Virus record (IMG/VR): IMGVR_UViG_3300043570_001980
Coordinates: 1 to 64,000 of that record
Direction: 5' to 3' (one strand)
Length of the DNA: 64,000 bases
Below the pieces are notes generated by a model. The model worked only from the letters and a program-made list of their open reading frames with translations. It was not told the origin of the DNA and searched no databases. The stretch's first letter is position 1. Each line of letters begins with the position of its first letter. This document shows, piece by piece, positions 3 to 62,391 of this stretch. Position numbers and translations under genes: made by a program.

Positions 3-737
3 GACGCATGGCGCATACAACAAAACCGCTGGCGCTGGAAACAAAGTCATACCAATGTTGTTCGTAGAGTATTAGGTCATGCCAAGCGTGGCACTAGAGT
101 TGTATATGTCGCAGGCAATCACGATGAATTCCTAAGACCCATGATACCATATGGGTTTTCTTTTGGTCTAATAGAAATACACAATCAAACGGAGCACATA
201 GGTGCTGATGGTAAGCACTACTTAGTTGTCCACGGTGACTTGTTTGATGGCATCACTAGACTTGCACCATGGATAGCGTTCTTAGGAGATAAAGCATATG
301 ACTTTGTTCTTGGCCTCAACAATAAATTTAATTGGATTCGTCGCCGCATGGGTTTTGGGTACTTTAGCCTTAGCAGGTATCTTAAGTACAAGGTTAAAAA
401 AGCAGTAGACTTTGTGTTCAAGTTTGAAGAGAACTTGGCCAACTACTGTAAGAAGCGAGGCTTTGATGGAGTCATATGCGGACACATACACCATGCAGAA
501 ATAAAAGAAATCAACGGTGTCGCATACATGAATGATGGCGACTGGGTTGAATCATGCACAGCACTTGTAGAACACTGGGATGGCCGTTGGGAAATAGTTA
601 CTTGGACTCGGGAGAAGGACGATGTGGATACTGATAATACTGGCAGTTCATATAAACGACTCAAAAGACGTGCCGGGACGGATAGAACTGATGTTCCAAG
701 ACCAACACTCTTGCCAACAGGCATTAAGTACAATTAA
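3..737 (+). CDS. Metallophosphoesterase, PlcP/LpxH-like (5'-truncated by window edge)
   Basis: Frame open from base 3 (DAWRIQQNRWRWK...VAGNHDEFL). Motifs GNHD, VHGDLFD, CGHIH, NDGDWVESCTALVE. Family assignment by motif recognition. Confidence 0.8.
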   Translation, partial: DAWRIQQNRWRWKQSHTNVVRRVLGHAKRGTRVVYVAGNHDEFLRPMIPYGFSFGLIEIHNQTEHIGADGKHYLVVHGDLFDGITRLAPWIAFLGDKAYDFVLGLNNKFNWIRRRMGFGYFSLSRYLKYKVKKAVDFVFKFEENLANYCKKRGFDGVICGHIHHAEIKEINGVAYMNDGDWVESCTALVEHWDGRWEIVTWTREKDDVDTDNTGSSYKRLKRRAGTDRTDVPRPTLLPTGIKYN

Positions 738-792
738 GTACAAATTAAAGTTTGAAAATTTTAAGGTGGTAGCAGAATGCAAAAAACAATAA
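622..792 (+). CDS. 56-aa small protein overlapping both neighbours
   Basis: Hand translation MWILIILAVHINDSKDVPGRIELMFQDQHSCQQALSTIKYKLKFENFKVVAECKKQ*. GGAGAAGG SD upstream; hydrophobic N-terminus; two Cys. Confidence 0.6.
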   Translation: MWILIILAVHINDSKDVPGRIELMFQDQHSCQQALSTIKYKLKFENFKVVAECKKQ

Positions 793-1493
793 GTGATAAA
801 ATAACTATCGTAGTACCTTGCAAGAATGAAGAAAATTACATTCATCATTTGCTAGACTCTCTGCGAGCACAAAATATTAGCACAACCAGAATCATCATTG
901 CTGATTGTTCTACTGATAACACTAGACAAGTTATACAAGATAACAGCTCGGGATTGAACGTTGAAATCATTGATGGTGGCCCTGTTAGTTTTGCCAAGAA
1001 CAACGGAGCACGATTGGTTACCACACCCTACATCTTGTTTATTGATGCTGATGTTCGCTTTTTTAAAAATACTGTGATTCAAGATGCGGTTGACAAAATT
1101 CAATCAAAAAACTTGGACCTGGTTGGACTAAACATCAAATGTTATGATCGTGACATGCGAGCCATGGTTGGATTTGCTCTTTTTAACACCATAAATCACA
1201 CATTGAAATTTTTCTCACCTTTTGCAGTTGGAGCATTCATGCTGACACGCAAAGATAAATTTGACGAGTTTGGTGGATTTCCTGAACAGTTTGCAACCTC
1301 TGAGGATTACTTTTTGTCAAGAAAGTATAGTCCTCGAAAGTTTAAAATTGTTCGACATTACTTTGGGCAGGATAGTCGTAGATTTAAAAAGATGGGATAT
1401 CTTGGAATGGGCAAGTATCTAATCAAGAACTTTATCAACCGCAACAACAAGAAATACTGGGACAGTTTAGATTCATCCAAATATTGGTCATAA
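777..1493 (+). CDS. Family 2 glycosyltransferase
   Basis: ITIVVPCKNEE, IIIADCSTD, and DXD motif FIDAD (GT-A fold). Confidence 0.9.
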   Translation: MQKTISDKITIVVPCKNEENYIHHLLDSLRAQNISTTRIIIADCSTDNTRQVIQDNSSGLNVEIIDGGPVSFAKNNGARLVTTPYILFIDADVRFFKNTVIQDAVDKIQSKNLDLVGLNIKCYDRDMRAMVGFALFNTINHTLKFFSPFAVGAFMLTRKDKFDEFGGFPEQFATSEDYFLSRKYSPRKFKIVRHYFGQDSRRFKKMGYLGMGKYLIKNFINRNNKKYWDSLDSSKYWS

Positions 1494-1513
1494 TTTTGTA
1501 ATAAAATTGTAAT
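1485..1513 (+). promoter_or_regulatory. Pho box (three half-sites at 11-bp period)
   Basis: TGGTCAT (1485), TTGTAAT (1496), TTGTAAT (1507) with A/T-rich spacers; resembles PhoB consensus CTGTCAT; directly upstream of pstS. Confidence 0.7.
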
Positions 1514-1555
1514 ATTATTCTCCTTAAATAATCTTGTCACAACAAGGAGAACTCA

Positions 1556-2557
1556 GTGAACAAACTACTAGCAATTTTATTAGCCGCAGTAACTTTATCA
1601 GCACAAGCAGACATCACAGGTGCTGGCGCAACATTTCCATTCCCAATCTATGCCAAGTGGGCCGAAGGATATAAGAAAACCACAGGCACTAGTTTAAACT
1701 ATCAGAGTATTGGTAGTTCGGGCGGCATCAGACAGATCAATGCCAAGACCGTGGACTTTGGAGCAACTGATGCCCCAGTAAGCGGTGAGAACTTGGACAA
1801 GATGGGACAAGTTCAGTTTCCTGCTATCATTGGCGGAACAGTTCCTGTTGTAAACTTAGACGGATTCAAGCCAGGTGAACTACGCATCACTGGTACAGTT
1901 ATGGCAGAAGTGTTCTTGGGCAACATTGCCAAGTGGAATGATCCTAAATTAACAGCATTGAATCCAGGTAAACAGTTACCCGATCAACCTATCACCATTG
2001 TACATCGTGCTGATGGGTCAGGTACAACATTTAACTGGACAGACTATCTTGCCACAGTTAGCCCTGAGTGGTTACAGCGTGTGGGTCGTGGTGCCGCAGT
2101 CAAGTGGCCGGCGGCTACAGCAGTTGGTGGCAAAGGTAATGAAGGCGTTGCTGCCAATGTGAACAGAATCAAAGGTTCAATTGGCTATGTAGAGTATGCG
2201 TATGTTAAGAAAAACAACATGACATTCCTACAACTACAGAACAAATCAGGCCGGTATGTTAGTCCAGATGACCTAACATTTGCCGCAGCCGCAGACGGTG
2301 CTGATTGGTTTAGTGTTCCTGGTATGGGGTTGAGTATTGTGGATCAACGTAATCCCAATGCTTGGCCTGTCAGTTCAGCTAGTTTCATCATCATGTACAA
2401 AGAACCGAAGAGCAAAGCCACCAGTGACGAAGTACTAAAGTTCTTTGATTGGGCATTTAAGAATGGTAAGAAAGATGCCGCTGATTTGGACTATGTGGCA
2501 TTGCCAGACAGTTTAACCAAGCAGATCCGTGAGCGTGTGTGGACACAGATTAAATAA
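1556..2557 (+). CDS. pstS: Phosphate ABC transporter periplasmic binding protein
   Basis: Signal peptide; ITGAGATFPFPIY, NYQSIGSSGGI, DFGATD, HRADGSGTT, IGYVEYAY. GTG start with AAGGAG SD. Confidence 0.97.
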   Translation: MNKLLAILLAAVTLSAQADITGAGATFPFPIYAKWAEGYKKTTGTSLNYQSIGSSGGIRQINAKTVDFGATDAPVSGENLDKMGQVQFPAIIGGTVPVVNLDGFKPGELRITGTVMAEVFLGNIAKWNDPKLTALNPGKQLPDQPITIVHRADGSGTTFNWTDYLATVSPEWLQRVGRGAAVKWPAATAVGGKGNEGVAANVNRIKGSIGYVEYAYVKKNNMTFLQLQNKSGRYVSPDDLTFAAAADGADWFSVPGMGLSIVDQRNPNAWPVSSASFIIMYKEPKSKATSDEVLKFFDWAFKNGKKDAADLDYVALPDSLTKQIRERVWTQIK

Positions 2558-2602
2558 ACCGCGTACAAAATAGAGTACGGCTAGAACTCGTAACTGGCAC
2601 TG

Positions 2603-2623
2603 AGCCCCGAAAGGGGCTTTTTT
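2603..2623 (+). terminator. Intrinsic terminator after pstS
   Basis: AGCCCC-GAAA-GGGGCT followed by T run. Confidence 0.9.
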
Positions 2624-2653
2624 ATACCCACTAAACTGTTGATTTATAACAAA

Positions 2654-2659
2654 TAAATA
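2654..2659 (+). promoter_or_regulatory. Late-type promoter TAAATA
   Basis: AATAAATA upstream of the secreted-protein operon; resembles T4 late TATAAATA. Confidence 0.55.
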
Positions 2660-2687
2660 CGGAGACAATAACAACTATAAGGTGAGT

Positions 2688-3911
2688 ATGATGAAAAAAA
2701 TTGCCCTGGGCCTGGCTAGCCTGGTGCTCGTGGTCACTGCCACTGCCACGGCACAAACAACTACTACATCCAGTTCTGCTGGTGGAACAACCACCGGCAC
2801 AAGTACACTTATTAATCAAGGTACCTACGACTCCAAGACTCTAGTTGATACTAACAGTACATCAAACAGTACCAGCACAGTAACATCAAACAGCAATACC
2901 AATAGCAACAGCACTAGCACCAGCGCAGCCACGGTCAACAGCACCAGTGTTAACACCAACAACAATAACAACGTTAGCACCAGTGTCAACACCAACAACA
3001 ACATTAATTCAGGTACCAGCACAATTAATAACAATAATGTCAACTCCGGTACAATGACATACAACAATAACAACAACAATGTTAATAGCGGTACAATGAC
3101 TTACAATAACAACAATGCAAGCACCAGTTCAAGTACTAATGTTAATACCAATAACAATATCAACACTGGTGATATGACTTATAGAAATATTAATACTTCA
3201 ACTAGTACTAGCACAGCAACTAACAATAATAACAACGTCAACACCGGTGATATGACGTATAGAAACATTAATAACAGTACAAGTACTGCCACCAACAACA
3301 ATAATAACGTTAGTACAAGCACTTCTACTAACAATAATGTAAACACTGGTGATATGACCAATCGTAATATCAGTACTTCAACCAGCGCAATCACAGCTAC
3401 CAATAATAATATTAATCAAAACAGTTCTGTGAATACAAATATTCAGCAAGGCGAGGTAACCAATACTAATATTAATAAAACTGAAATTACGCAACGAGTG
3501 ATTCAACCTCCTCCTACTGCGGTAGCACCTGCCATGCTGAGTGGCGGCAACGCTGATTTATGTTCAACAGGTAGTTCAGGCTCTGTACAGACACAGGTAT
3601 TTGGTGTAAGTTCGGGTGGCACAGTTAGAGATATGAATTGCGAACGATTGAAGTTATCTAAAACCTTGTATGACATGGGCATGAAGGTTGCGGCGGTTGC
3701 TACCATGTGCCAAGACCGTAGAGTGTTTGATGCTATGTTGGCCGCAGGCACCCCTTGCCCATACGAAGGCAAGATTGGTGAACAAGCACGAGCACAGTGG
3801 GAAGCAAATCCAGACAAGATTCCAAAGTTGGATGAGGTAAAAATAGATGACACTTATAAGAAAGTTGGCATTGGCGCTATCCTTGGCGTTGTTGTCCGCA
3901 AGTTATTCTAA
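2688..3911 (+). CDS. Secreted Asn/Thr/Ser-rich repeat protein with Cys-containing C-terminal domain
   Basis: Signal peptide (KKIALGLASLVLVVTATATA), about 200 aa low-complexity repeats, then a globular domain with 4 Cys. Start 2682/2688/2691 uncertain. Confidence 0.8.
   Translation: MMKKIALGLASLVLVVTATATAQTTTTSSSAGGTTTGTSTLINQGTYDSKTLVDTNSTSNSTSTVTSNSNTNSNSTSTSAATVNSTSVNTNNNNNVSTSVNTNNNINSGTSTINNNNVNSGTMTYNNNNNNVNSGTMTYNNNNASTSSSTNVNTNNNINTGDMTYRNINTSTSTSTATNNNNNVNTGDMTYRNINNSTSTATNNNNNVSTSTSTNNNVNTGDMTNRNISTSTSAITATNNNINQNSSVNTNIQQGEVTNTNINKTEITQRVIQPPPTAVAPAMLSGGNADLCSTGSSGSVQTQVFGVSSGGTVRDMNCERLKLSKTLYDMGMKVAAVATMCQDRRVFDAMLAAGTPCPYEGKIGEQARAQWEANPDKIPKLDEVKIDDTYKKVGIGAILGVVVRKLF
2860..3480 (+). 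repeat. Nested coding repeats (NNNNVNTGDMTYRNI / VNSGTMTYNNN)
   Basis: aacactggtgatatgac near 3162, 3240 and 3342; AAC/AAT runs. Confidence 0.85.
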
Positions 3912-6213
3912 CAGTCAAGATATATCCACTACAGGTAATTTAATAAATTACAGTACTTCACCTACGGGTACAACCAGTACCTGGAACAATGGCGTGTATG
4001 TTAATCAACTGTGCTTTTATGCCGGTGAACCAGGCAACTGTGGACCAAACCCTAGTATTAGACCAGGCGGCTACATCAATTTCAGTTATGGCACCGCAGA
4101 CCTGAATCAGGTCATTAACATAAACACAGCATTATCTGCGGGCGGAGCAGGTGTGCAACTTTCTGGATTTAACTACAGCTTCATGGCCAAGAACGGCAAT
4201 GGATGGGACGATGCTAGACAGGATTATCTTGCCGCTTATGTCAAGTTGTATGGTTCAGGTGGCAACTTAATAGCAAACTATGATTACTCTGCGGCAACTA
4301 ATAACAAATACAACTGGACTACTTTTAATTTCAACGAGACATTTGCTACATCTTACATTGCATCAACACTAAGCACAGCACAAGTAGGTATGGTGGGCAG
4401 AGATAATAATTTCTGGGCAGGCAATTATGGTCCAGAAGTTATGAATGTTGATTTTCGTTTAAAATACAAAGTAGATCCGTGTGCTACCAATCCTGCTTAT
4501 AGTTCAACATGTGCTGGCTTCAGCAGTATTCTTAATACCAATAATTTGTTAGATTCAACTCAAGGTGGATCAAGTCTAAATCAAGCGTTTGCAATCAACA
4601 CCGCATTGCAGAATGCCGGAGTTGGGGCAACCATACATGGATTCAACTACGGGTTCAACTGGAGAGTTGGGCAAGGTTTTTCAGGATGTACTGCTTGGAA
4701 TCAAGATGGGTCGTGTAGTTGGACCATGAACATACCTGCGTATGCTAATGCCACAGTCTCACTTACAAACAGTGGCAACCAGTCTATACAATCAAAGACT
4801 TACAGTTTTACGGGTGATGGCACCAGTGGATCGGTTAGTGACAAATATTTGTTGCCAGTTAGTATGAATCAATCCATGTTGGGTACAGGTAGAATTGTAG
4901 GGTCAGCATCAGGCACCGGTTCTTCTGTGGAAGGTGCATGGGCAACAATGATTTATACTGCTGATCCTTGTGTTGCTAATCCCTTATATAGTACTAATTG
5001 TAAGGGCTATGCTTATGCTATGGCTAAACAATCCATGGCTAATAATACAACTTCAAACAATATGATGGGCACTGATGGTGCACCATTCATAGACCCAACA
5101 ACTGGTACACAGTCTGACCCCACGCGACCTCCACCTCCACCGGGCACTGAAGGAGCTGCCGGATCCCCGCCGGGAAGTCAGCCACCACCAGGTTCAGAGC
5201 CCCCACCTGGAAGTCAGCCTCCTCCGGGTAGTCCACCACCGCCAGGAACAACACAAACTGCTTCTAATAATCCAGCAGGTCCACCGCCTGCAAATCAACC
5301 TCCTCCACCAAGTGGCGGCAGTAGTCAACCCCGAGCAGGTGAAGTTAAAACAGCCGGTGATAACAAAAGCACATCATCTTCGCCGGTATCATTAAGTTCC
5401 GTAATGAGTATGATTAGTAGTAATCAAGCTAGAATAGGCAATGAAGCAAAAGCAGTTGTTCAGGCCGCCGAAGCACAGGCTACTCAATCTGCTACATCTG
5501 CACAGCAACAAGCAGAAGCAGTAGCTGGTTCCGCAGTTGCACAAAGTATGGCTAGTAGTTCAACAGTAACAGGTGCATCATCGGGTACCACAACTAGAAC
5601 AGCAACTCAAACTCAAGTCAGTGCATTTTCATTACCAACAGGTCAAGCTTCTACTGCCACAAGTATAGAAGCAATACGCCCGCCAACGCAAGCAACCACA
5701 ACTGAAACTGTTCAAAGTACTGGTACAGGATTATCGGCACTTACTACAACATATCAATTCAGCTCTATTTCAGCACCTTCTACTAGTGCATTTTCAGCAG
5801 TTGAATCATCATTAACCAACTTTGGATTTCAGTTACCAACTGGACGATCAAATATACAAATAGAACCCGAATCAACTCCCCAAACTGAAGGTATCAAAGT
5901 AGGCGGTCGTTCACCGTTAAATGATGCTATAGAACAGCGCCCGATGTTGCCAAATGCAATTACACAAGAACAAAAGACAGACGCAGTAAACAAAAATGTT
6001 CAACCAAATGAACTAGCAGGCAGGGTAGATATAACTAGAATGGCGACACAACCTGCTGGTTATCAAGCATACTCAATGATGATGCCTGATGTGGCATTCT
6101 ATGCACCACGAGAGATTTACCGGAATCAAGTTAATGTAGACAATGCCAGAGTCTTACGTCAATTGTCTAGTGATCGATTACACCAAGACTTGGTGAACCT
6201 ACAATACAAATAA
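3847..6213 (+). CDS. Large secreted protein with Pro-rich linker
   Basis: Signal peptide; two similar Cys-bounded domains (DPCATNPAYSSTC, DPCVANPLYSTNC); GSQPPP repeats; Ser/Thr/Ala-rich tail. Confidence 0.8.
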   Translation: MTLIRKLALALSLALLSASYSNSQDISTTGNLINYSTSPTGTTSTWNNGVYVNQLCFYAGEPGNCGPNPSIRPGGYINFSYGTADLNQVININTALSAGGAGVQLSGFNYSFMAKNGNGWDDARQDYLAAYVKLYGSGGNLIANYDYSAATNNKYNWTTFNFNETFATSYIASTLSTAQVGMVGRDNNFWAGNYGPEVMNVDFRLKYKVDPCATNPAYSSTCAGFSSILNTNNLLDSTQGGSSLNQAFAINTALQNAGVGATIHGFNYGFNWRVGQGFSGCTAWNQDGSCSWTMNIPAYANATVSLTNSGNQSIQSKTYSFTGDGTSGSVSDKYLLPVSMNQSMLGTGRIVGSASGTGSSVEGAWATMIYTADPCVANPLYSTNCKGYAYAMAKQSMANNTTSNNMMGTDGAPFIDPTTGTQSDPTRPPPPPGTEGAAGSPPGSQPPPGSEPPPGSQPPPGSPPPPGTTQTASNNPAGPPPANQPPPPSGGSSQPRAGEVKTAGDNKSTSSSPVSLSSVMSMISSNQARIGNEAKAVVQAAEAQATQSATSAQQQAEAVAGSAVAQSMASSSTVTGASSGTTTRTATQTQVSAFSLPTGQASTATSIEAIRPPTQATTTETVQSTGTGLSALTTTYQFSSISAPSTSAFSAVESSLTNFGFQLPTGRSNIQIEPESTPQTEGIKVGGRSPLNDAIEQRPMLPNAITQEQKTDAVNKNVQPNELAGRVDITRMATQPAGYQAYSMMMPDVAFYAPREIYRNQVNVDNARVLRQLSSDRLHQDLVNLQYK
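5125..5310 (+). repeat. GSxPPP 18-bp coding repeat
   Basis: GSQPPP GSEPPP GSQPPP GSPPPP. Confidence 0.75.
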
Positions 6214-6223
6214 GGAAACAAAA

Positions 6224-6844
6224 ATGGCAGAAGAAATAAAAAACGTAAACGCAAAGGTTGATGAACTAGAAGCAGCCGCCAAAAAGTACGCATCAAAAGA
6301 TACTGTTATAAGCATTGGCGGCTACGAGTTTACCCCAGCCAAACTAATGGTTGCAGCCACAATCGTATCATCTATACTAGGTGGACTGTATGGATCATTT
6401 GAAGTGTACAAAGACTACGTGGGCATGAAGAAAAAGATTGCTGAATATGCCGCTCCAGACCTAAGTGGATTTGACAAGCGACTGGCAGTGATCGAAGAAA
6501 ACTCTAGCAAAACCAGCGACTACACACGTGATATCAAAACTGATTTGAAGAATGATATTCGCCGTAATGAAACTGTGACCGAGCAAGTAGAACGTAGCGT
6601 TAAGAATGCACAGCGTGAAACTGAGTCAGAAATGCGTGACATGCGCAAGGCTGTGCGTGAAGACCTGGAACGTGCTAGGACCGAAGCGGCTGCAATTCGC
6701 CGAGATATGGAAAACACACGCAAAGAAATCAACAGTGAATTTACTGCGGCCCGTAGAGAAATCAATCGCGAAGTAGAAACACTAAAGAGAGAAGTCGATA
6801 GTAAAATACAAAAAGCCATGGATAATCCATTGGCCAACAAGTAA
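6224..6844 (+). CDS. Single-TM coiled-coil protein
   Basis: TM segment LMVAATIVSSILGGLY followed by long charged heptad-like region; AAGGA SD. Confidence 0.8.
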   Translation: MAEEIKNVNAKVDELEAAAKKYASKDTVISIGGYEFTPAKLMVAATIVSSILGGLYGSFEVYKDYVGMKKKIAEYAAPDLSGFDKRLAVIEENSSKTSDYTRDIKTDLKNDIRRNETVTEQVERSVKNAQRETESEMRDMRKAVREDLERARTEAAAIRRDMENTRKEINSEFTAARREINREVETLKREVDSKIQKAMDNPLANK

Positions 6845-6845
6845 C

Positions 6846-7010
6846 ATGTTCAACGCCATAGGCTCAATAATGTTAGCAGGTATGCTAGCCCAAGAGCCAA
6901 GGTGTGTGAAATGGACATGGACGGGCGATGTCTACAATCGCAGAGTGGTATGCCTAGAATGGTCTAAACCCCCGCCGCAACCTAAAGATAAGGATCCTAA
7001 GAAAACATGA
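6846..7010 (+). CDS. 54-aa secreted/membrane peptide
   Basis: MFNAIGSIMLAGMLAQEPRCVKWTWTGDVYNRRVVCLEWSKPPPQPKDKDPKKT*; ATGA-coupled to the next gene. Confidence 0.6.
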   Translation: MFNAIGSIMLAGMLAQEPRCVKWTWTGDVYNRRVVCLEWSKPPPQPKDKDPKKT

Positions 7011-7489
7011 TTGATCCTATCACAATTGGCATTGCGTTCACGGCCGCTCAACAATCGGTAAATTATATCAAAAAGGCCATTGCCCTAGGCAAAGATGTCA
7101 ACAGTCTATACGGTCAGTTTGCTAAGTTTTTTGAAAACAGCGACACAATTCACGCTGCCAGCATAGAGGCACAAACCAGTAAAAAAATTCTCACTGACGG
7201 ACAGATTAGAGCAATGTCTGTACAGATTGCCATGCAGAGTAAAGCCCTGCGTGATGCTGAAAAAGAACTAAAAGAAATGTTGATATGGTCTGGCAACAAA
7301 GATGTCTGGGATGAAATGATGGCCGAGCGTGTGCGTATGTACAAGGAACGTGCCAAACTACAGGCAGACATAAAAAATGCCAGGATACAAGCACAGTCCG
7401 ACATGATAGATAGACTGCTTATAGGTACAAGTTTCATGGCAATAGCGATCCCTGTTGTGCTGTTCACTTTTGCTATGATCACCAGATAA
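7007..7489 (+). CDS. Hypothetical protein with C-terminal TM
   Basis: 160 aa, helical, hydrophobic C-terminus. Confidence 0.75.
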   Translation: MIDPITIGIAFTAAQQSVNYIKKAIALGKDVNSLYGQFAKFFENSDTIHAASIEAQTSKKILTDGQIRAMSVQIAMQSKALRDAEKELKEMLIWSGNKDVWDEMMAERVRMYKERAKLQADIKNARIQAQSDMIDRLLIGTSFMAIAIPVVLFTFAMITR

Positions 7490-7514
7490 ATAATATATTA
7501 AAGAAAGACTTAAC

Positions 7515-8051
7515 ATGGCAGAAGTAAAAACATTGTCACGTTCTGAACGTGAAGCACAAATTAAAGATAGAGCAGGATGGGTCATTACTGTCATTGCACT
7601 ATTATTAGCAATTACAACCTATATGTCTAGCGGATTTAGTAGCAAGATATTAAGTAACACCATCAAAGCAAATGATACTTGGAACTTTTATCAAGCCAAG
7701 AGTATCAAACAAAGTATTGCCGAAGGACAGTTAGAAACCACCACAGATCCAAAACGCAAAGAACAACTACAAGCCAAGATTGATCGTTACGAGTCTGACC
7801 CAGCCAAAGGTGAGGGCAAGAAAGAGTTGATGGCCAAAGCATTACAGATTGAAGCCGAACGTGATGAAGCCAAGAAACATACCCCATGGTTGACGTTTGC
7901 CGCAATGGCATTCCAGTTGGCCATTGTACTACTGTCTGCTAGTATTTTAGCTGTGGACAAACGTATGTTTTGGGGCAGTATCGGCGTAAGTATTTTTGGA
8001 ACATTGCTGTTAACCCAAGGCATTTGGCTTGTTATACCACTTGTGATATAA
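7515..8051 (+). CDS. DUF4337-like membrane protein
   Basis: TM, then ANDTWNFYQAKSIK, coiled coil and two TMs. TAAATA at 7487. Confidence 0.7.
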   Translation: MAEVKTLSRSEREAQIKDRAGWVITVIALLLAITTYMSSGFSSKILSNTIKANDTWNFYQAKSIKQSIAEGQLETTTDPKRKEQLQAKIDRYESDPAKGEGKKELMAKALQIEAERDEAKKHTPWLTFAAMAFQLAIVLLSASILAVDKRMFWGSIGVSIFGTLLLTQGIWLVIPLVI

Positions 8052-11051: not shown

Positions 11052-11180
11052 ATGAAGATGTTTGTTATTGGTACCATTTTTGGTCTAATACTTGCTACGG
11101 TTGGATTCAGCGGTATTGCTCGTATGCTAGACAAAGGGGTGGATACAGTTAAAACTCAAAGTCAGGAGATGGCAAAATGA
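11052..11180 (+). CDS. 42-aa membrane peptide
   Basis: MKMFVIGTIFGLILATVGFSGIARMLDKGVDTVKTQSQEMAK*; AGGAGG SD. Confidence 0.7.
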   Translation: MKMFVIGTIFGLILATVGFSGIARMLDKGVDTVKTQSQEMAK

Positions 11181-11346
11181 AAAAAGCAGTTGCTATATTA
11201 CTTGTCCTAATGCTTGCAGTTTTTGGTCAGATACTTGCTACTAACAGCAGTATTGCTCGCATGTCAGACAAAGGGGTGGATACAGTTAAAACTCAAAGTC
11301 AGGAGATGGCAAAATGAAAAAAGCAGTTGCTATATTACTTGTCTCG
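11077..11346 (+). repeat. Tandem duplication, 137-bp period
   Basis: gacaaaggggtggatacagttaaaactcaaagtcaggagatggcaaaatgaaaaaagcagttgctatattacttgtc occurs twice; diverged flanking homology upstream. Confidence 0.95.
11177..11317 (+). CDS. 46-aa chimeric peptide created by the duplication
   Basis: MKKAVAILLVLMLAVFGQILATNSSIARMSDKGVDTVKTQSQEMAK*; in frame, ATGA-coupled at both ends. Confidence 0.6.
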   Translation: MKKAVAILLVLMLAVFGQILATNSSIARMSDKGVDTVKTQSQEMAK

Positions 11347-11436
11347 ATGCTCACAGCCTGTGGAACCATGGGCGGAGCAGTAGGTGGTGCCGGCGAAGAT
11401 CTTAAAAAAGCCGGCGAATGGATTAAAACTCGTTAA
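11314..11436 (+). CDS. Entericidin EcnA/B-family lipoprotein
   Basis: MKKAVAILLVSMLTACGTMGGAVGGAGEDLKKAGEWIKTR*; LTAC lipobox and GAGEDLKKAG pattern. Confidence 0.75.
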   Translation: MKKAVAILLVSMLTACGTMGGAVGGAGEDLKKAGEWIKTR

Positions 11437-12113: not shown

Positions 12114-12689
12114 ATGACACAAATTAAAGATGACGAAGATTACATTAGCCCTGGACAAAGCTTGCTTGAAGCTGGTATGTATGCCTTTATGGGTCCAGTA
12201 GATACCGAAAGTGTTAAGCCGGTAATTGAATGGATTCTTCATGCCAACTATGTTGTTAAGAAAAAGAAAAAAGAACTACTGCTAATGATTTGCAGTGAAG
12301 GTGGAGATTTGGAGCCTGCCTTTGCATTGATCGACGTAATGCAGAGTAGCAACATACCAATCAAGACTGTTGGGCTAGGTCAGATTTCTTCTTCGGGTTT
12401 GTTGATATTTCTAGCAGGAACTCCAGGCCGAAGATTGTTAACCCCAAATACCAGTATTTTGAGTCATCAATTTAGTTGGGGATCAGATGGCAAAGCACAC
12501 GAACTGTTTGCCACAGTCAAAGAGTTTGAACTCTGCCAGAAACGAATGCTTAATCACTATAAACAGGCCACTGGACTTGATGAAGATAAACTAAAACAAT
12601 GCTTGTTGCCACCACATGATGTCTGGCTCAGTGCCGAGGAAGCACTGGACTTTGGAATCTGCAATTCCATTAGCCGACTTGCTCGTTAA
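12114..12689 (+). CDS. clpP: Clp protease proteolytic subunit-like
   Basis: ICSEGG, GLGQISSSG (catalytic Ser position), SHQ (His), DVWLSAEEALDFG (Asp). Confidence 0.88.
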   Translation: MTQIKDDEDYISPGQSLLEAGMYAFMGPVDTESVKPVIEWILHANYVVKKKKKELLLMICSEGGDLEPAFALIDVMQSSNIPIKTVGLGQISSSGLLIFLAGTPGRRLLTPNTSILSHQFSWGSDGKAHELFATVKEFELCQKRMLNHYKQATGLDEDKLKQCLLPPHDVWLSAEEALDFGICNSISRLAR

Positions 12690-14291: not shown

Positions 14292-15599
14292 ATGGAACAA
14301 AATAAATTGAATATCAACCAACAAACTTTTTGTATTAGTCCCTGGACTGAAGTCAGGATCAATTCAGACGGCACAATGAACTTTTGTCATTTTGCTGATC
14401 GTGCTGACTTACCAAACAGTGAGCATATCAATTCAATGACTGTGGATGAGTATTTTTCAAATTCAAATTCAGCACAATCTGCAAGAAAAAATATACTCAA
14501 TGGAAACCCTGTTGCCCGATGTCATCGTTGCTATAAAGAAGATCAACACAGTGAAGTAACATTTCGTAGTCGCAGAAATCTGCAGGCTGCTATATTTCCG
14601 GGACAGGATTTTCAACAAAGCGCAGAAGAAAGTCCTGTTTGGAAAATTATCAATGCTGATAAATCTAGTCCAAGATTTTATCATATTAGCTTTAGTAATA
14701 TTTGCAACATGGCCTGTGTGATGTGTGATGGGTTTAACAGCACACTATTGGCTGCCGATTTAAATAAAATTGGCCTAAGAGATTCTAGTATTCCGATCAA
14801 ACACGACTGGACTGATACACCCACTTGGGGAAAATTCTGTGATCACTTGTTAAACAACAATGATATTGTTTGTCTGCATGTCATGGGCGGAGAACCGTTG
14901 TACCATAAACGATTTAGAGATTTGATAACATTCTTGTGCAACAACAATCACACAGATTTCCATCTTACTTTTGTGACCAATGGAACTATCTACGATCCAG
15001 AGTTGATGACACAATTAGAAAAATTTAAGTCTGTGCAGATTGAAATCAGCATTGAGAATCTAGACATTAGTAATGATTATATTCGATACCCAGGAAAAAC
15101 TAGCAAGATTGTCGACAACATTCGACAATATCTAGCCCACTCAAATGAAAAATTTAGCACAGTATTACGCACAGTTCCGCAACTGTTAAGTCTGATGCAC
15201 TACGATAAACTTTTGGATTTTTGTCTAGAACACTCTATCATTATTGACAGTAATGTCCTACATCGTCCAGAGTTTTTTAGACCCTGTTACCTTCCTAACT
15301 CGGCCAAGGAAGTAATTAAATCAAGACTTGCAAGATTTATTCTCAAAGATAAAGATGTACTGCACAATATTAACGTTAGAAATCAATCAAGAGTGGTAGA
15401 ATCAATATCTCATCATGCACAAATGATTATAGGATTGTTGGACCAGACTGGAGTCAACATAGAAACTGTTAGACAAGAACTAACTGACTATTGTGCTAAA
15501 TTTGATCAATTACGAGAACATGACTTGCGTGAGTTTGTGCCAGAACTAGCAGAATTTTTAGATGAGTACGGTTATGCAAAAAAACGATATCAAAATTAA
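14292..15599 (+). CDS. Radical SAM protein
   Basis: CNMACVMC; GGEP; N-terminal FCISPW and CxxC auxiliary motif. Confidence 0.9.
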   Translation: MEQNKLNINQQTFCISPWTEVRINSDGTMNFCHFADRADLPNSEHINSMTVDEYFSNSNSAQSARKNILNGNPVARCHRCYKEDQHSEVTFRSRRNLQAAIFPGQDFQQSAEESPVWKIINADKSSPRFYHISFSNICNMACVMCDGFNSTLLAADLNKIGLRDSSIPIKHDWTDTPTWGKFCDHLLNNNDIVCLHVMGGEPLYHKRFRDLITFLCNNNHTDFHLTFVTNGTIYDPELMTQLEKFKSVQIEISIENLDISNDYIRYPGKTSKIVDNIRQYLAHSNEKFSTVLRTVPQLLSLMHYDKLLDFCLEHSIIIDSNVLHRPEFFRPCYLPNSAKEVIKSRLARFILKDKDVLHNINVRNQSRVVESISHHAQMIIGLLDQTGVNIETVRQELTDYCAKFDQLREHDLREFVPELAEFLDEYGYAKKRYQN

Positions 15600-56883: not shown

Positions 56884-57870
56884 TCAGTGTCCGCATGCAC
56901 TAACACACATATACAACTTACCCTGCGCCACACTGGGTAAAGTCCAGGTTTTTTCTACCTGTTCAAACCAATCAATACAATGCTCTAGACTGTATTCTAA
57001 TGCATTGTTTTCTTTAACTAAATCTTTAAATTGACTATTACCGGGCTGGTGCATTGTCTTTGGAAAAAATCCCAAATAACAACAAGGATACACAGATCCG
57101 TCGGCAGCTATGTAAATCTCTTTTTGTTTTATATGGCCACAATCTATTTGTGCATTATCATCAACCCAGGGTATTTTCTTTTTATGATCAAACCAGGTAA
57201 CATGATCTTCAATCAAATTGTTAGCGTCGGGTATGTCAGGTTGTGCATCACCTAGCCAATGACTAAACTCGCCGTTTCTTGTAAATACCGGTCCTTGGTT
57301 ACGTCCGTGATCTCGTACTATAAAATCTGAAAATCCCAACTGACGGCTCAGTGTCTGACAACTATCAAATTGATGTTGATTATGTTTAAACGGGATAAAT
57401 TTCCAAACAGCATTTCCGCCTGCCTGGATTAATGCCACAGCATTATCGATGATCTTCTCCCAGTCAGTGTCCTGACGGTACAGACTGTGTGTGTCTTTGA
57501 GCCCGTCTAATGCAAATAATACTTCAATTCGATGGTTGTTTAATTTCTGCCACCAGGCAGTAGAACGTGTACTGCCATTTGTTTCAATTTGTATTTTGGC
57601 AGTACTATTAGATAAAAAGTACTCGACTATTTCCAACGCATCGCTGGCCAAACTAAAATCTCCAAGATTTCCGTTAAAGTTAATACGGTTAATTTGTTTT
57701 AAAAAGTCTGAAGGGAATATGTGTTGAATATCACTAAGTGACAACTCAGTTAACGGATATCCTCCATTAAAATCTACGCCTCGGTAGTTACGCATACACA
57801 TGGGACATCGTGCATTACAACGAGAACTAAGTTCAATATGTAATGCACGGATTTGGTCTATTTTAATCAT
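56884..57870 (-). CDS. Radical SAM protein with SPASM/twitch-type Cys motif
   Basis: CNARCPMC; C-terminal C...DGSVYPCC...C...CG; TATAAATA 5 nt upstream. Confidence 0.9.
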   Translation of the reverse strand: MIKIDQIRALHIELSSRCNARCPMCMRNYRGVDFNGGYPLTELSLSDIQHIFPSDFLKQINRINFNGNLGDFSLASDALEIVEYFLSNSTAKIQIETNGSTRSTAWWQKLNNHRIEVLFALDGLKDTHSLYRQDTDWEKIIDNAVALIQAGGNAVWKFIPFKHNQHQFDSCQTLSRQLGFSDFIVRDHGRNQGPVFTRNGEFSHWLGDAQPDIPDANNLIEDHVTWFDHKKKIPWVDDNAQIDCGHIKQKEIYIAADGSVYPCCYLGFFPKTMHQPGNSQFKDLVKENNALEYSLEHCIDWFEQVEKTWTLPSVAQGKLYMCVSACGH

Positions 57871-61404: not shown

Positions 61405-62391
61405 ATGAGTACATTAAAAAAGTTTATAGCCGCATTACTTGTTACTGCAAGTACACTAGTTTACGCATGGGAACCAACCAAACCCGTTACTGTATACATA
61501 GGTAACACACCCGGTGCAGGTAATGAAATGGCCTTTAGAAAACTAGCTGATATTGTACAGAAACAAAACCCAAAGTTTGTGTATGTTGTACAAAACATTC
61601 CTGGAGCAGATAGTGTTATTGCCAACAACCGTTTTTTAGAAGCGCCAAATGACGGCTATACTATTAACTTGCCTAGTCATATGAGCAGTTATGTTACAAA
61701 TGATATCTGGGAAAAGTCAATTAAGAAATACAACTACGACTCATTTGTTGATGTGTTGACCATGGGCAAGAGCCCGTTGGTATTGGTTGCTGGCGTCAAA
61801 AGCGGCATTAACACCCCACAAGAGTTTGTGAAGTATATTCAGTCAGGCAGAACAATCAACATTGCCATTGGTGGTGGCGCACATCGCACAGCATTTGAGT
61901 ATTTGATGGACAAGGGCAAGGGCAACAAAGACACAGTCAAACCCATCAAGTTTAACGGACCACAGCCTGCAGTACAAAGTGCCGCTAGCTTTGATCCAAA
62001 ATTTGCTGGCACTGAGTTTGCTATTATTCCTATTGCAGTGGCCAAAGCTCTAGTTGATGCAGGCAAGGTAAAACCCATTGGATTTACAGGCACACGTCGG
62101 ATGGCACAATTTCCTGATGTCCCATTGTTAAACACAGTAGCGCCTGGTATCAATGTGTATGCGGCCTGGTCAATACAATTGCCGCCTGGCACAGACAAGG
62201 ACATTGTTGCATGGTATCAACAGCAATTCAGCAAGGCTATTCGTTCAGCAGAATACAAAGAGTACACGGATGCCAATGTTATTTTCTATGCTGAAGATGA
62301 GTTGACTCCTGTCGGGCTTCGAAAGCAAATGGACGAATTACGTGCGGCATTTATTCCTGTGTTGAGTCGAATTGATTTAAGTAAAGAATGA
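61405..62391 (+). CDS. Bug/TctC-family periplasmic solute receptor
   Basis: Signal peptide; P.KPV..Y...PG, N.PGA, A.NDGYT, VKPIG.TG.RR..FPDVP, W.....P.GT.K.IV. Confidence 0.85.
   Translation: MSTLKKFIAALLVTASTLVYAWEPTKPVTVYIGNTPGAGNEMAFRKLADIVQKQNPKFVYVVQNIPGADSVIANNRFLEAPNDGYTINLPSHMSSYVTNDIWEKSIKKYNYDSFVDVLTMGKSPLVLVAGVKSGINTPQEFVKYIQSGRTINIAIGGGAHRTAFEYLMDKGKGNKDTVKPIKFNGPQPAVQSAASFDPKFAGTEFAIIPIAVAKALVDAGKVKPIGFTGTRRMAQFPDVPLLNTVAPGINVYAAWSIQLPPGTDKDIVAWYQQQFSKAIRSAEYKEYTDANVIFYAEDELTPVGLRKQMDELRAAFIPVLSRIDLSKE

What the first reader, a model, noticed from the sequence alone, without database searches (positions are those of the whole stretch)
2654..8051. Late-type operon of six exported/membrane proteins of unknown function
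Seen: a secreted Asn/Thr-repeat protein with a Cys domain; a 788-aa secreted protein with two DPCxxNPxYSxxC-bounded domains and a Pro-rich spacer; a single-TM coiled coil; a Cys-pair peptide; a C-terminal TM protein; a DUF4337-like protein. The genes are tightly coupled. Inference: one envelope-spanning or surface-displayed assembly (membrane anchor, stalk, extended linker). It could serve superinfection exclusion, adhesion or lysis; no lysis or virion homology was recognised.
Basis: partly seen in the sequence, partly recalled or inferred. Interest (0 to 1): 0.6.

Follow-up and report, generated by a model that had tools for sequence, protein, structure and literature searches.

The report
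Lysis-linked periplasmic module of phages
Six late genes of a 342-kb lake-water phage encode exported and membrane proteins, and their three-gene core recurs inside the host-bursting (lysis) gene clusters of many unrelated aquatic phages, so it is probably an undescribed helper of lysis and matches no known system.

Summary
Window 2682-8051 holds six real, tightly packed + strand genes: four exported proteins and membrane proteins, bounded by a terminator upstream and a convergent gene downstream. The genome's late-promoter-like motif ATAAATA stands before them. The window is the start of a 341,990-bp jumbo phage found in at least 24 lake metagenome studies.

g1-g2-g3 are collinear in all 61 related loci. 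g4-g6 are frequent add-ons. The g1 Cys domain defines a large phage family (1541 clusters at 50% identity) with no Pfam or PDB relative. The g2 N-terminus folds confidently as two CBM/lectin-like beta-sandwiches.

New here: the g1-like gene, always followed by a long secreted linker protein and usually by a g3-type bitopic coiled-coil protein, lies in or beside lysis cassettes in 11 of about 19 independent contexts, next to five different endolysin families. This genome also has a complete canonical holin-endolysin-spanin cluster at 67.7-70.8 kb, so the module is accessory.

Best reading (confidence 0.45): an inner-membrane-tethered periplasmic assembly that controls or assists envelope rupture. 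Complex formation was not shown. Rivals are a non-canonical spanin, exclusion or receptor masking, and a virion adhesin.

The parts
2602..2619 (+). Intrinsic-terminator-like hairpin plus T run after the upstream PstS gene. It marks the 5' boundary of the unit.
   Evidence: 7-pair stem with 5 G-C pairs, then a T run; sequence read
2653..2659 (+). ATAAATA late-promoter-like motif, 22 nt before the g1 ORF
   Evidence: 47 sites in the genome, all intergenic, 38 within 60 nt of an ORF start; the same motif precedes baseplate, virion, tail-spike and endolysin genes.
2682..3911 (+). g1, an exported protein. Signal peptide 2682-2756. Asn/Thr/Ser-rich repeat spacer 2757-3491. Conserved 4-Cys domain 3492-3845. 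Short hydrophobic C-terminal tail 3846-3908.
   Evidence: The Cys domain is 88% identical (median) across loci. The family has 1541 clusters. It matches phrog_20531 and has no Pfam or PDB relative.
3847..3911 (+). 65-nt out-of-frame overlap of the g1 tail with the g2 signal peptide (dual coding)
   Evidence: the same overlap occurs in 25 distinct loci. Column entropy is 0.27-0.67 at all three codon positions, against 0.6-1.4 in the single-frame flanks.
3847..6213 (+). g2, an exported 788-aa protein. Signal peptide 3847-3915. Lectin/CBM-like domain 1 at 3919-4521 and domain 2 at 4522-5046, each closed by a DPCxxNPxYSxxC loop (4474-4512 and 4963-5001). Pro-rich linker 5116-5331. Long helix 5392-5553. 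Conserved C-terminal region 5986-6210.
   Evidence: pLDDT above 90 for residues 30-400; D1 and D2 are paralogous, E 2e-8
6224..6844 (+). g3, a bitopic inner-membrane protein. Conserved N-terminal motif. TM at 6344-6403. Coiled coil. Invariant C-terminal DNPLA motif at 6824-6838.
   Evidence: (N-terminal half 87.5% identical)
6846..7010 (+). g4, a 54-aa peptide with a hydrophobic N-terminus, an invariant two-Cys core (6903-6962) and a basic tail
   Evidence: C20, W23, W25, GDVY, C36 and W39 invariant in 20 sequences
7007..7489 (+). g5, a tail-anchored membrane protein. Invariant D3-P4 at the N-terminus. TM at 7406-7477.
   Evidence: Matches phrog_32327. A homologue lies inside the module in the marine contig L100.
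7486..7492 (+). Second ATAAATA motif, 22 nt before g6
7515..8051 (+). g6, a DUF4337 membrane protein with about 3 TM segments (7578-7634, 7884-7952, 7971-8045)
   Evidence: (PF14235, E 1.6e-33). Present in 26 of 61 loci, sometimes upstream on the other strand.

Best explanation
The six genes are a late transcription unit. I read them as encoding a Sec-exported, inner-membrane-tethered periplasmic assembly that belongs to the phage's lysis programme.

The core is a mobile three-gene module:
- g1 is a periplasmic 4-Cys-domain protein. Depending on the phage, it is held by a short C-terminal hydrophobic tail, by an N-terminal lipid, or by nothing.
- g2 is a periplasmic protein with variable lectin-like heads, a very long Pro-rich or acidic linker and a conserved C-terminal end.
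- g3 is a bitopic inner-membrane protein with a periplasmic coiled coil.

Most likely model: g3 (with the g1 tail) fixes the assembly to the inner membrane, and the g2 heads bind envelope glycan (peptidoglycan, or lipopolysaccharide in transit). The complex would then couple the state of the wall to the final breach. That is, it tunes the timing or completeness of lysis, in the logic of antiholin or tether systems. It is not the holin, endolysin or spanin itself. This genome encodes those separately at 67.7-70.8 kb. g4, g5 and g6 are clade-specific membrane or periplasmic additions.

Shown: the genes, the export signals, co-conservation, the late motif, the lectin-like fold and the linkage to lysis cassettes. 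Inferred: the topology of g3, the physical complex, the ligand and the effect on lysis.
For: Unit and timing:
- Terminator at 2602-2619, a convergent gene after 8051, and gaps of -65 to +25 nt.
- The ATAAATA motif before g1 and g6 is the same as before the baseplate, virion and GH19 endolysin genes.

Export:
- Signal peptides are conserved in g1 and g2 homologues.
- Paired Cys loops fit an oxidising compartment.

Co-conservation:
- g1-g2-g3 are collinear in every related locus with enough flank.
- The 65-nt overlap is constrained in both frames.

Fold:
- g2 residues 30-400 have pLDDT above 90. The top Foldseek matches are tandem CBM22, CBM51 and discoidin-type modules.

Lysis linkage:
- The g1-domain gene plus a following long secreted protein lies within a few genes of a verified peptidoglycan hydrolase in HTVC023P (M15_3), HTVC033P (Amidase_2), MW202481 and L092 (GH24), L090, L015 and L107 (GH19), L096 and L016 (M15), L100 (GH108) and L109 (GH24).
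- That is 11 of about 19 contexts. The binomial P is 1e-5 at a chance rate of 0.14.
- The module coexists with, and sits beside, canonical i- and o-spanin genes in L015 and L109.
- The genome has its own holin, endolysin and spanin. Hence the module is accessory.

Anchoring:
- Anchor type is interchangeable. 27 of 149 family representatives have a hydrophobic C-tail and about 5 of 83 have a lipobox. This fits a tethered periplasmic component.
Against: - No experiment and no homology to any lysis protein.
- In this genome the module lies about 60 kb from the lysis cluster. In 8 of about 19 contexts no hydrolase is nearby (HTVC115P, HTVC202P, Mosig, CRP-810, CRP-207, L086, L094).
- Lysis cassettes are also hot spots for unrelated late accessory genes, so position is circumstantial.
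- The late motif also drives virion genes.
- Complex prediction gave no verdict, and the g1 domain could not be folded with confidence.
- Outside the clade only the g1 domain is robustly homologous. g3 homology holds for a subset. 'g2-like' is mostly positional and architectural.
- A periplasmic lectin domain that varies strongly between close relatives is not obviously expected for a peptidoglycan binder.
Confidence: 0.45

Rival explanations
1. Non-canonical spanin. g3 acts as the inner-membrane spanin. g1 (a lipoprotein in some phages) and g2 supply the outer-membrane or wall-side partner. The complex disrupts the outer membrane after the wall is degraded.
For: - g3 has i-spanin size and architecture.
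- The module occupies the spanin position next to the holin and endolysin in HTVC023P, HTVC033P, L096 and L100.
- No lipobox o-spanin ORF was found in the SAR11-phage loci.
- Some g1 homologues carry a lipobox.
- About 15% of phages lack a recognisable spanin (bioRxiv 10.1101/515445, seen).
Against: - This genome, L015 and L109 carry canonical i- and o-spanin pairs. In the latter two they lie right beside the module.
- The most conserved part of g3 is its N-terminus and TM, not the periplasmic part.
- The g3 profile shows no similarity to the genome's own i-spanin (hhalign probability 1%).
- Most g1 proteins are not lipidated.
Confidence: 0.15
2. Superinfection exclusion or receptor masking. 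The exported lectin-like protein binds host surface or envelope glycans. It blocks later phages, or it coats debris after lysis so that progeny are not lost on it, as T5 Llp does.
For: - The g2 heads are the variable part: D1 is 53% and D2 28% identical (median), against 88% for the g1 domain. Domain number changes and heads are replaced, as expected for a host-specific ligand.
- Export and disulfides suit proteins that must survive outside the cell.
Against: - The promoter motif is late, whereas exclusion is usually early.
- There is no hit in PADLOC.
- The repeated link to endolysin and holin genes is not explained.
- No route to the cell surface exists before lysis.
- The g1 domain, the defining part, is extremely conserved across hosts of different classes (60% identity to a SAR11 podovirus).
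Confidence: 0.15
3. Virion-associated fibre or adhesin, or a structure displayed on the infected cell.
For: - The lectin fold is shared with tail fibres and host-specificity proteins.
- The motif is late.
- The module follows tail or tail-fibre genes in HTVC115P, CRP-810, L092, L096 and L107.
Against: - Cleavable Sec signal peptides are conserved in g1 and g2, whereas tailed virions assemble in the cytoplasm.
- g3, g5 and g6 have membrane anchors.
- No usher, secretin or autotransporter is present.
- There is no sequence match to any annotated structural protein.
Confidence: 0.07
4. No assembly at all. These are neighbouring but functionally independent late accessory genes.
For: - The complex prediction gave no verdict.
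- g4-g6 come and go.
- g2-like proteins outside the clade are not demonstrably homologous.
Against: - g1 followed by a long secreted protein is seen in every context examined.
- The 65-nt dual-coding overlap is conserved in 25 distinct loci.
- In a T4-like contig the three genes form an island on the opposite strand to all their neighbours.
Confidence: 0.08

Closest known systems
Two-component spanins (lambda Rz/Rz1 type)
   Same: Both are late, lysis-cassette-linked envelope proteins. g3 has the i-spanin build (N-terminal TM plus periplasmic coiled coil, 110-200 aa). g1 is a small exported Cys-containing protein with a Pro motif, and a few homologues are lipoproteins.
   Different: No sequence or profile similarity. 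Most g1 proteins have signal-peptidase-I type signals. A third large lectin-linker protein is always present. Canonical spanins coexist with the module in this genome, L015 and L109.
T4 lysis-inhibition set: holin T, antiholin RI, RIII (from my own knowledge of the system)
   Same: A bitopic inner-membrane protein of about 200 aa with a short cytoplasmic N-terminus and a large periplasmic part (g3 compared with T). Small exported periplasmic partners with disulfides (g1 and g4 compared with RI). A cytoplasm-facing partner (g5 compared with RIII). The genes are scattered away from the endolysin in a large T4-like genome.
   Different: No homology was detected. Pfam Phage_holin_T is absent from the genome, although that control search rang nowhere. 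The genome already has a GTA-type 3-TM holin. Nothing in T4 corresponds to g2.
Mu gp25 releasin (DUF2730; PMC9239132)
   Same: A small N-terminal-TM plus helical protein within a few genes of diverse endolysins. One g3 homologue carries a precomputed weak DUF2730 hit.
   Different: My own Pfam scans of g3 and eight g3-like proteins gave no DUF2730 hit at E of 0.1 or below. The releasin is N-out/C-in with a cytoplasmic domain and occurs in transposable phages.
CBM22 / CenC-type carbohydrate-binding modules and discoidin (galactose-binding-like) domains
   Same: g2 residues about 25-400 fold as two such beta-sandwiches (Foldseek probability 1.0, E 2.6e-6 to tandem CBM22 4xup).
   Different: Sequence identity is about 10% and there is no Pfam hit. 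Each domain is closed by a family-specific disulfide loop. The ligand is unknown.
T5 Llp, T4 Sp and Imm (exclusion or receptor-masking envelope proteins; from my own knowledge)
   Same: Small exported or lipid-anchored phage proteins that act in the envelope.
   Different: Those are early single proteins. This is a late multi-gene module linked to lysis genes, and there is no homology.

Membership tests
DUF4337 (PF14235), for g6 | Match to the Pfam model above its gathering score over nearly full length | tested here: met
   E 1.6e-33, 116.6 bits against a cut-off of 27, profile positions 7-160 of 161
Two-component spanin, i-spanin (g3) | N-terminal TM with a periplasmic coiled-coil domain | tested here: met
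   25-style reading: TM about residues 41-60, the rest helical and charged. Orientation is inferred from charge bias in homologues only.
Two-component spanin, i-spanin (g3) | Adjacent, overlapping or embedded o-spanin gene encoding a small lipoprotein (lipobox Cys) | tested here: not met
   g4 follows g3 but has no lipobox. The genome's real lipobox o-spanin is at 68793-69059.
Two-component spanin, i-spanin (g3) | Sequence or profile similarity to known spanin families | tested here: not met
   PHROGs gave no spanin family for g3. hhalign against the genome's own i-spanin gave probability 1%.
Two-component spanin | Required for outer-membrane disruption (spherical cells without it) | not testable with these tools
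   Needs genetics
Unimolecular spanin (T1 gp11 type), for g1 | N-terminal lipoprotein signal plus C-terminal TM in one protein | tested here: not met
   g1 has an AxA-type signal ending ..ATAQ and only an 11-residue hydrophobic tail. No family member was seen with both a lipobox and a C-tail.
Holin (any class), for g3, g5, g6 | Match to a holin family | tested here: not met
   No Pfam or PHROG holin hit. The genome's GTA_holin_3TM-type holin is at 70206-70778.
Mu releasin DUF2730, for g3 | Match to PF10805 | tested here: not met
   no hit at E of 0.1 or below. The only trace is a precomputed 'weak' hit on one homologue.
Carbohydrate-binding beta-sandwich (galactose-binding-like / CBM4_9-22), for g2 N-terminus | Jelly-roll beta-sandwich fold matching solved CBMs | tested here: met
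Carbohydrate-binding beta-sandwich, for g2 N-terminus | Demonstrated glycan binding or conserved ligand residues | not tested
   Ligand site not analysed. A binding assay is needed.
Anti-phage defence or exclusion systems (PADLOC) | Match to any defence-system model | tested here: not met
   only weak coiled-coil hits of g3 to ZorA tails
T4-type late promoter | TATAAATA-like element confined to intergenic DNA upstream of late (virion, lysis) genes | tested here: met
   Transcription itself was not tested, since no RNA run holds the phage.

The most novel reading that the evidence does not exclude
The g1/g2/g3 module is a fourth functional class of lysis-cassette proteins in phages of Gram-negative aquatic bacteria. 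It would be a periplasmic, glycan-reading tether that gates or completes envelope rupture, for example a lysis-inhibition-type sensor or a device that uncouples wall and outer membrane. It is encoded by more than 1500 protein clusters that have no Pfam family, no solved structure and no published description.
Probability: 0.35. Interest if true: 0.8.

Novelty: new variant of a known kind. Interest (0 to 1): 0.65.

Why it matters
Lysis of Gram-negative hosts is taught as three steps: holin, endolysin, spanin. Recent work keeps adding players, such as the releasin, disruptin and Lcc6.

Here is a very abundant, entirely unannotated protein set. The g1 domain alone saturates an 8000-candidate search and forms 1541 clusters at 50% identity. 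It is shared by SAR11, Roseobacter and freshwater betaproteobacterial-type phages of podo-, sipho-, myo- and jumbo size, and it keeps turning up inside their lysis cassettes.

If it controls or assists lysis, it bears on burst timing and mortality of the most abundant aquatic bacteria. It would also give a name to a large block of viral dark matter. If it is instead an exclusion or debris-masking device, it is still a widespread new envelope system. Several culturable phage-host pairs carry it, so the question can be tested directly.

Tried and rejected
Searches and predictions that gave nothing usable:
- DNA and g2 protein searches of the isolate-phage collection found no match.
- Pfam, PHROGs, NCBIfam and PADLOC gave no informative family for g1-g5.
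- PDB sequence searches with g2 and with a 94-member g1-family profile found nothing.
- A Pfam scan of 94 g1-family members showed no recurrent fused domain.
- ESM Atlas feature searches for g2 and g3 returned only unnamed viral clusters at scores below 0.9, and no model is held.
- The AlphaFold2 model of the g1 Cys domain had mean pLDDT 49.8 and was not used for fold search.
- The C-terminal half of g2 was also low confidence.
- Complex prediction with g3, the g1 domain and the g2 C-terminus gave no verdict (score 0.00, controls not run). This is not evidence either way.

Ideas rejected:
- A curli link. CsgG is absent from the genome.
- The module as the phage's only spanin or holin. Canonical genes were found at 67.7-70.8 kb.
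- The deposited 'lysozyme' labels of CRP-810 gp51 and CRP-207 gp73. These are g3-type TM coiled coils with no lysozyme domain, so I did not count them as endolysin neighbours.

Other results:
- The genome-contig scan found the g1 domain only on metagenome-bin contigs of mixed labels, probably mis-binned phage. This gives no cellular homologue and only a weak host hint towards Polynucleobacter. A first try with the diverse alignment failed for lack of a conserved stretch.
- The distant 'g2-like' and some 'g3-like' assignments did not reach significance in profile tests. They are reported as positional and architectural only.
- Read laying was not used. Only DNA contig runs hold the phage.
- No alternative genetic code was needed.
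Full report
WHAT THE WINDOW IS. The window is the first 64 kb of a single 341,990-bp virus record, about 41% G+C and about 95% complete by CheckV. Baseplate-wedge, virion, tail-spike and endolysin genes elsewhere in the record show it is a tailed jumbo phage. Near-identical DNA of the region occurs in at least 24 lake-water metagenome studies, and no RNA run holds it. Upstream of the finding lie auxiliary genes: an LpxH-like phosphoesterase, a family-2 glycosyltransferase and PstS.

Six + strand ORFs fill 2682-8051.
- g1 (409 aa) has a signal peptide and a spacer that is 48% Asn/Thr/Ser. The spacer carries 42- and 78-nt tandem repeats and five N[ST]G[TD]MT units. It is followed by a 4-Cys domain and a short hydrophobic tail.
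- g2 (788 aa) has a signal peptide and two domains, each ending in DPCxxNPxYSxxC. After these come a 72-residue stretch that is 42% Pro, a long helix, a low-complexity region and a conserved end.
- g3 has one TM segment and a charged helical remainder.
- g4 is a 54-aa peptide with an invariant two-Cys core.
- g5 is tail-anchored.
- g6 is a bona fide DUF4337 protein.

The gaps between genes are -65, +10, +1, -4 and +25 nt. A strong terminator-like hairpin at 2602-2619 closes the PstS gene, and the next genes after 8051 converge from the other strand. The probable g1 start is the ATG at 2688 or 2691, behind an AGGTGA.

'LATE-TYPE' IS SUPPORTED. An 8-mer scan of upstream regions picked out (C)ATAAATA. 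ATAAATA occurs 47 times in the genome where composition predicts about 133. Every site is intergenic, and 38 lie within 60 nt of an ORF start. The genes it precedes include a baseplate wedge subunit, virion structural proteins, a tail-spike-like protein, a tape-measure/lysin protein and the GH19 endolysin. Sites stand 22 nt before g1 (2653) and 22 nt before g6 (7486). The element resembles the T4 late promoter TATAAATA (my own knowledge). Transcription itself was not observed.

THE GENES ARE CO-CONSERVED.
- A scan of IMG/VR with g2 gave 63 loci, many on contigs of 300-350 kb.
- g1, g2 and g3 are present in that order wherever the flank allows. g4, g5 and g6 occur in 32, 35 and 26 of 61 loci, with some reordering.
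- Conservation is uneven. The g1 Cys domain is 88% identical (median) and the g3 N-terminal half 87.5%. The g2 end is 61%, g2 domain 1 is 53% and domain 2 is 28%.
- Relatives have one or two heads, or unrelated heads. The two heads of g2 are paralogues (E 2e-8).
- The 65-nt g1/g2 overlap recurs in 25 distinct loci. Its variability is low at all three codon positions, so both frames are under selection. The g1 tail and the g2 signal peptide are therefore both real.

WHAT THE PROTEINS LOOK LIKE.
- AlphaFold2 with a 51-row alignment models g2 residues 30-400 at pLDDT above 90 as two beta-sandwiches. The rest is low confidence apart from one helix.
- Foldseek places the sandwiches with tandem CBM22, CBM51, discoidin and other sugar-binding modules.
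- In the viral library the model matches two uncharacterised homologues, and then the lectin-type domains of many tail fibres. This is a generic fold match, not a match to a virion protein.
- The g1 domain did not fold confidently.
- No Pfam, NCBIfam, PADLOC or PDB relative exists for g1-g5.

THE g1 DOMAIN MARKS A HUGE PHAGE FAMILY.
- A word-indexed search saturated, with all 8000 candidates significant.
- The exhaustive profile search found 1541 clusters at 50% identity (578 at E of 1e-10 or below), nearly all 100-340 aa.
- Members share a plan: a signal peptide, a Ser/Thr/Asn-rich spacer, a Pro motif, the Cys domain and a variable end. 27 of 149 have a hydrophobic tail, and about 5 of 83 have a lipobox instead of a type-I signal.
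- In species-representative genomes the domain was found only on metagenome-bin contigs of assorted labels, which look like mis-binned phage.

THE NEW CLUE IS CONTEXT. tblastn found the domain in isolated phages. These are pelagiphages HTVC115P (60% identity), HTVC023P, HTVC202P, HTVC033P, Mosig and Baldr, Roseobacter phages CRP-810 and CRP-207, Ralstonia phage RSP15, and uncultured podoviruses. HTVC115P also has a clear g3 homologue.

In every context read, the g1-type gene is followed at once, often with an overlap, by a long secreted protein. That protein has a beta-rich or Cys-rich head and a Pro-rich or very acidic linker. Usually a small N-terminal-TM coiled-coil protein ending in NPL[AG] follows too.

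Verified peptidoglycan hydrolases lie within a few genes in these contexts:

| Context | Hydrolase | Other lysis genes seen |
|---|---|---|
| HTVC023P | Peptidase_M15_3 | |
| HTVC033P | Amidase_2 | |
| MW202481 | Phage_lysozyme | |
| L092 | Phage_lysozyme | |
| L090 | GH19 | |
| L096 | M15_3 | GTA-type holin |
| L100 | GH108 with PG_binding_3 | |
| L109 | Phage_lysozyme | lipobox o-spanin-like and i-spanin-like pair, then terminase |
| L107 | GH19-like protein with PG_binding_1 | |
| L015 | GH19 | i-spanin and o-spanin directly upstream of g1 |
| L016 | M15-like | |

That is 11 of about 19 independent contexts, with five hydrolase families. At a generous chance rate of 0.14 the binomial probability is 1e-5, and at 0.25 it is 0.002.

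One conserved module combined with interchangeable endolysins is the usual signature of lysis-cassette components.

Two deposited 'lysozyme' labels (CRP-810 gp51, CRP-207 gp73) are in fact g3-type proteins, and I did not count them.

THE MODULE IS ACCESSORY. The genome has a complete canonical set just outside the window:
- GH19 endolysin at 67677-68315 (phrog_181, E 2e-76).
- An overlapping pair: a TM coiled-coil protein, and an 88-aa lipobox protein that hits the Rz-like spanin family.
- A further lipoprotein.
- A GTA_holin_3TM-type holin at 70206-70778.

In L015 and L109 the module sits beside canonical spanin genes. The g3 profile shows no similarity to the genome's own i-spanin. The module is therefore not simply a replacement for the holin, endolysin or spanin here.

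LIMITS OF THE HOMOLOGY CLAIMS. Profile tests support g3 homology for HTVC115P, L090, L092, L094, L096, L100 and L107. After one iteration they also support CRP-207, CRP-810 and L086. The small proteins of HTVC023P, HTVC033P, HTVC202P, Mosig and L109 are similar only in build, end motif and position. The g2 end is significantly similar only within the clade and in L090. The robust statement is therefore this: the g1 domain gene, plus a following long secreted linker protein, plus (often) a g3-type protein.

HOW IT MOST LIKELY WORKS. All of the following is inference.
- g1, g2 and g4 are exported by Sec and form disulfides in the periplasm.
- g3 sits in the inner membrane with its coiled coil in the periplasm. 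The charge bias of most homologues favours N-in, though the window's own g3 is ambiguous.
- g5 faces the cytoplasm, and g6 spans the membrane.
- The most conserved elements are the g1 domain and the N-terminus and TM of g3. These should be the contact or working surfaces.
- The variable lectin heads on a linker far longer than the periplasm is wide look like a ligand-specific reader or tether.

Together with late timing and cassette linkage, this favours an inner-membrane-anchored periplasmic complex that modulates or assists envelope rupture (confidence 0.45). Its logic resembles the T4 T/RI/RIII lysis-inhibition set or a tether of spanin type, without homology to either.

Rivals:
- A true non-canonical spanin in the small phages that show no lipobox o-spanin (0.15).
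- Exclusion or debris masking through the variable lectin heads (0.15).
- A virion adhesin (0.07).
- Independent neighbouring genes (0.08).

The single complex prediction gave no verdict and is not used as evidence.

NOVELTY AND LITERATURE. Literature searches for spanins or lysis genes in pelagiphages, and for DUF4337, found no description of these proteins. The closest published ideas are the releasin of Mu (PMC9239132), Lcc6 of LambdaSo (10.1101/2024.01.23.576932) and the disruptin of phiKT (10.1101/515445). I rate this a new variant of a known kind, namely lysis-cassette envelope proteins, with a fair chance of being a new functional class.

HOUSEKEEPING. No read-laying was done. No alternative genetic code was used. 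Nothing human-like or toxin-related came up.

Noticed in passing
G000 67677-70778 (outside the window; loci L073, L083, L106): Complete canonical lysis cluster of this phage. It holds a GH19 endolysin, an overlapping i-spanin-like/o-spanin pair (lipobox LTAC, phrog_456), a second lipoprotein, a secreted Cys-rich 195-aa protein and a GTA_holin_3TM-type holin with a Pro/Gly-rich tail. The endolysin is preceded by the same ATAAATA motif as g1.
   Followed up: yes
whole genome; window sites 2653, 7486, 16516(-), 48099, 51495, 57882(-), 58803, 61331: ATAAATA is strongly avoided in coding DNA (47 sites against about 133 expected, all intergenic) and sits just upstream of ORFs. It is a T4-late-promoter-like element. 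A second enriched upstream word, TGCTATAAT(A), looks like an extended -10 of host sigma-70 type and may mark early genes.
   Followed up: partly
window 3847-3911: A conserved 65-nt dual-coding overlap. Because of it, the public gene call for g2 starts at residue 50 and loses the signal peptide, so database copies of this protein look cytoplasmic.
   Followed up: yes
window 11052-11436: Three tandem mini-genes for 40-46-aa hydrophobic-N-terminus peptides. Two end in nearly the same 20 residues. The third has a lipobox and a weak entericidin B-like match (E 0.008, far below the cut-off). The surrounding 9.9-12 kb encodes several more lipoproteins and secreted proteins, one with a 17-kDa-antigen-like end.
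   Followed up: partly
window 141-2557, 12114-12689, 14292-15599, 56884-57870, 61405-62391: Auxiliary genes: an LpxH-like phosphoesterase, a GT2 glycosyltransferase, PstS, ClpP, two radical-SAM/SPASM proteins and a TctC (Bug-family) binding protein. LpxH and TctC hint at a betaproteobacterial host. The closest genome-bin hit of the g1 domain is labelled Polynucleobacter (L090).
   Followed up: no
L066 6309-6731 (CRP-810 gp51) and L071 3292-3873 (CRP-207 gp73): Both are deposited as 'lysozyme' or 'putative lysozyme' but have no lysozyme domain. They are TM coiled-coil proteins homologous to g3. CRP-810 gp53 ('OmpA family protein') is a g1-domain protein with no OmpA domain by Pfam.
   Followed up: yes
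L066 4705-4965 and L071 1731-1940: Unannotated small lipoprotein ORFs just upstream of, and overlapping, the g1-type gene in both Roseobacter phages. Their mature part carries a CxRN..AQTL..IG..EAA..L.CQD motif that resembles half of the g1 Cys domain.
   Followed up: partly
L092 8974-9708: A class-3 lipase (PF01764, E 1e-16) sits between the module and the holin/lysozyme genes of a 49.5-kb phage contig. It may be an outer-membrane lipid esterase in a lysis cassette.
   Followed up: no
L094 7270-8546 and L107 6413-7682: In two contexts three small secreted proteins are inserted between the g2-type and g3-type genes. The first ends in a motif (..FNKAFPAGTYRA....C) that recalls spore-coat-U/Csu-type pilin domains. 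This is recalled from memory and was not tested.
   Followed up: no
L092 8756-8977, L096 8693-8923, L066 4463-4705, L107 4771-5004: A 70-80-aa N-terminal-TM coiled-coil protein (phrog_462, labelled 'lipoprotein' but without a lipobox) repeatedly flanks the module. It may be a further member.
   Followed up: partly
L091, L093, L094, L095, L096 (genome-contig hits): Phage contigs carrying the module are binned into MAGs labelled Actinomycetota, Aquiluna, Bacteroides and even a Methanobacteriota archaeon. This is most likely binning contamination, not host evidence.
   Followed up: no
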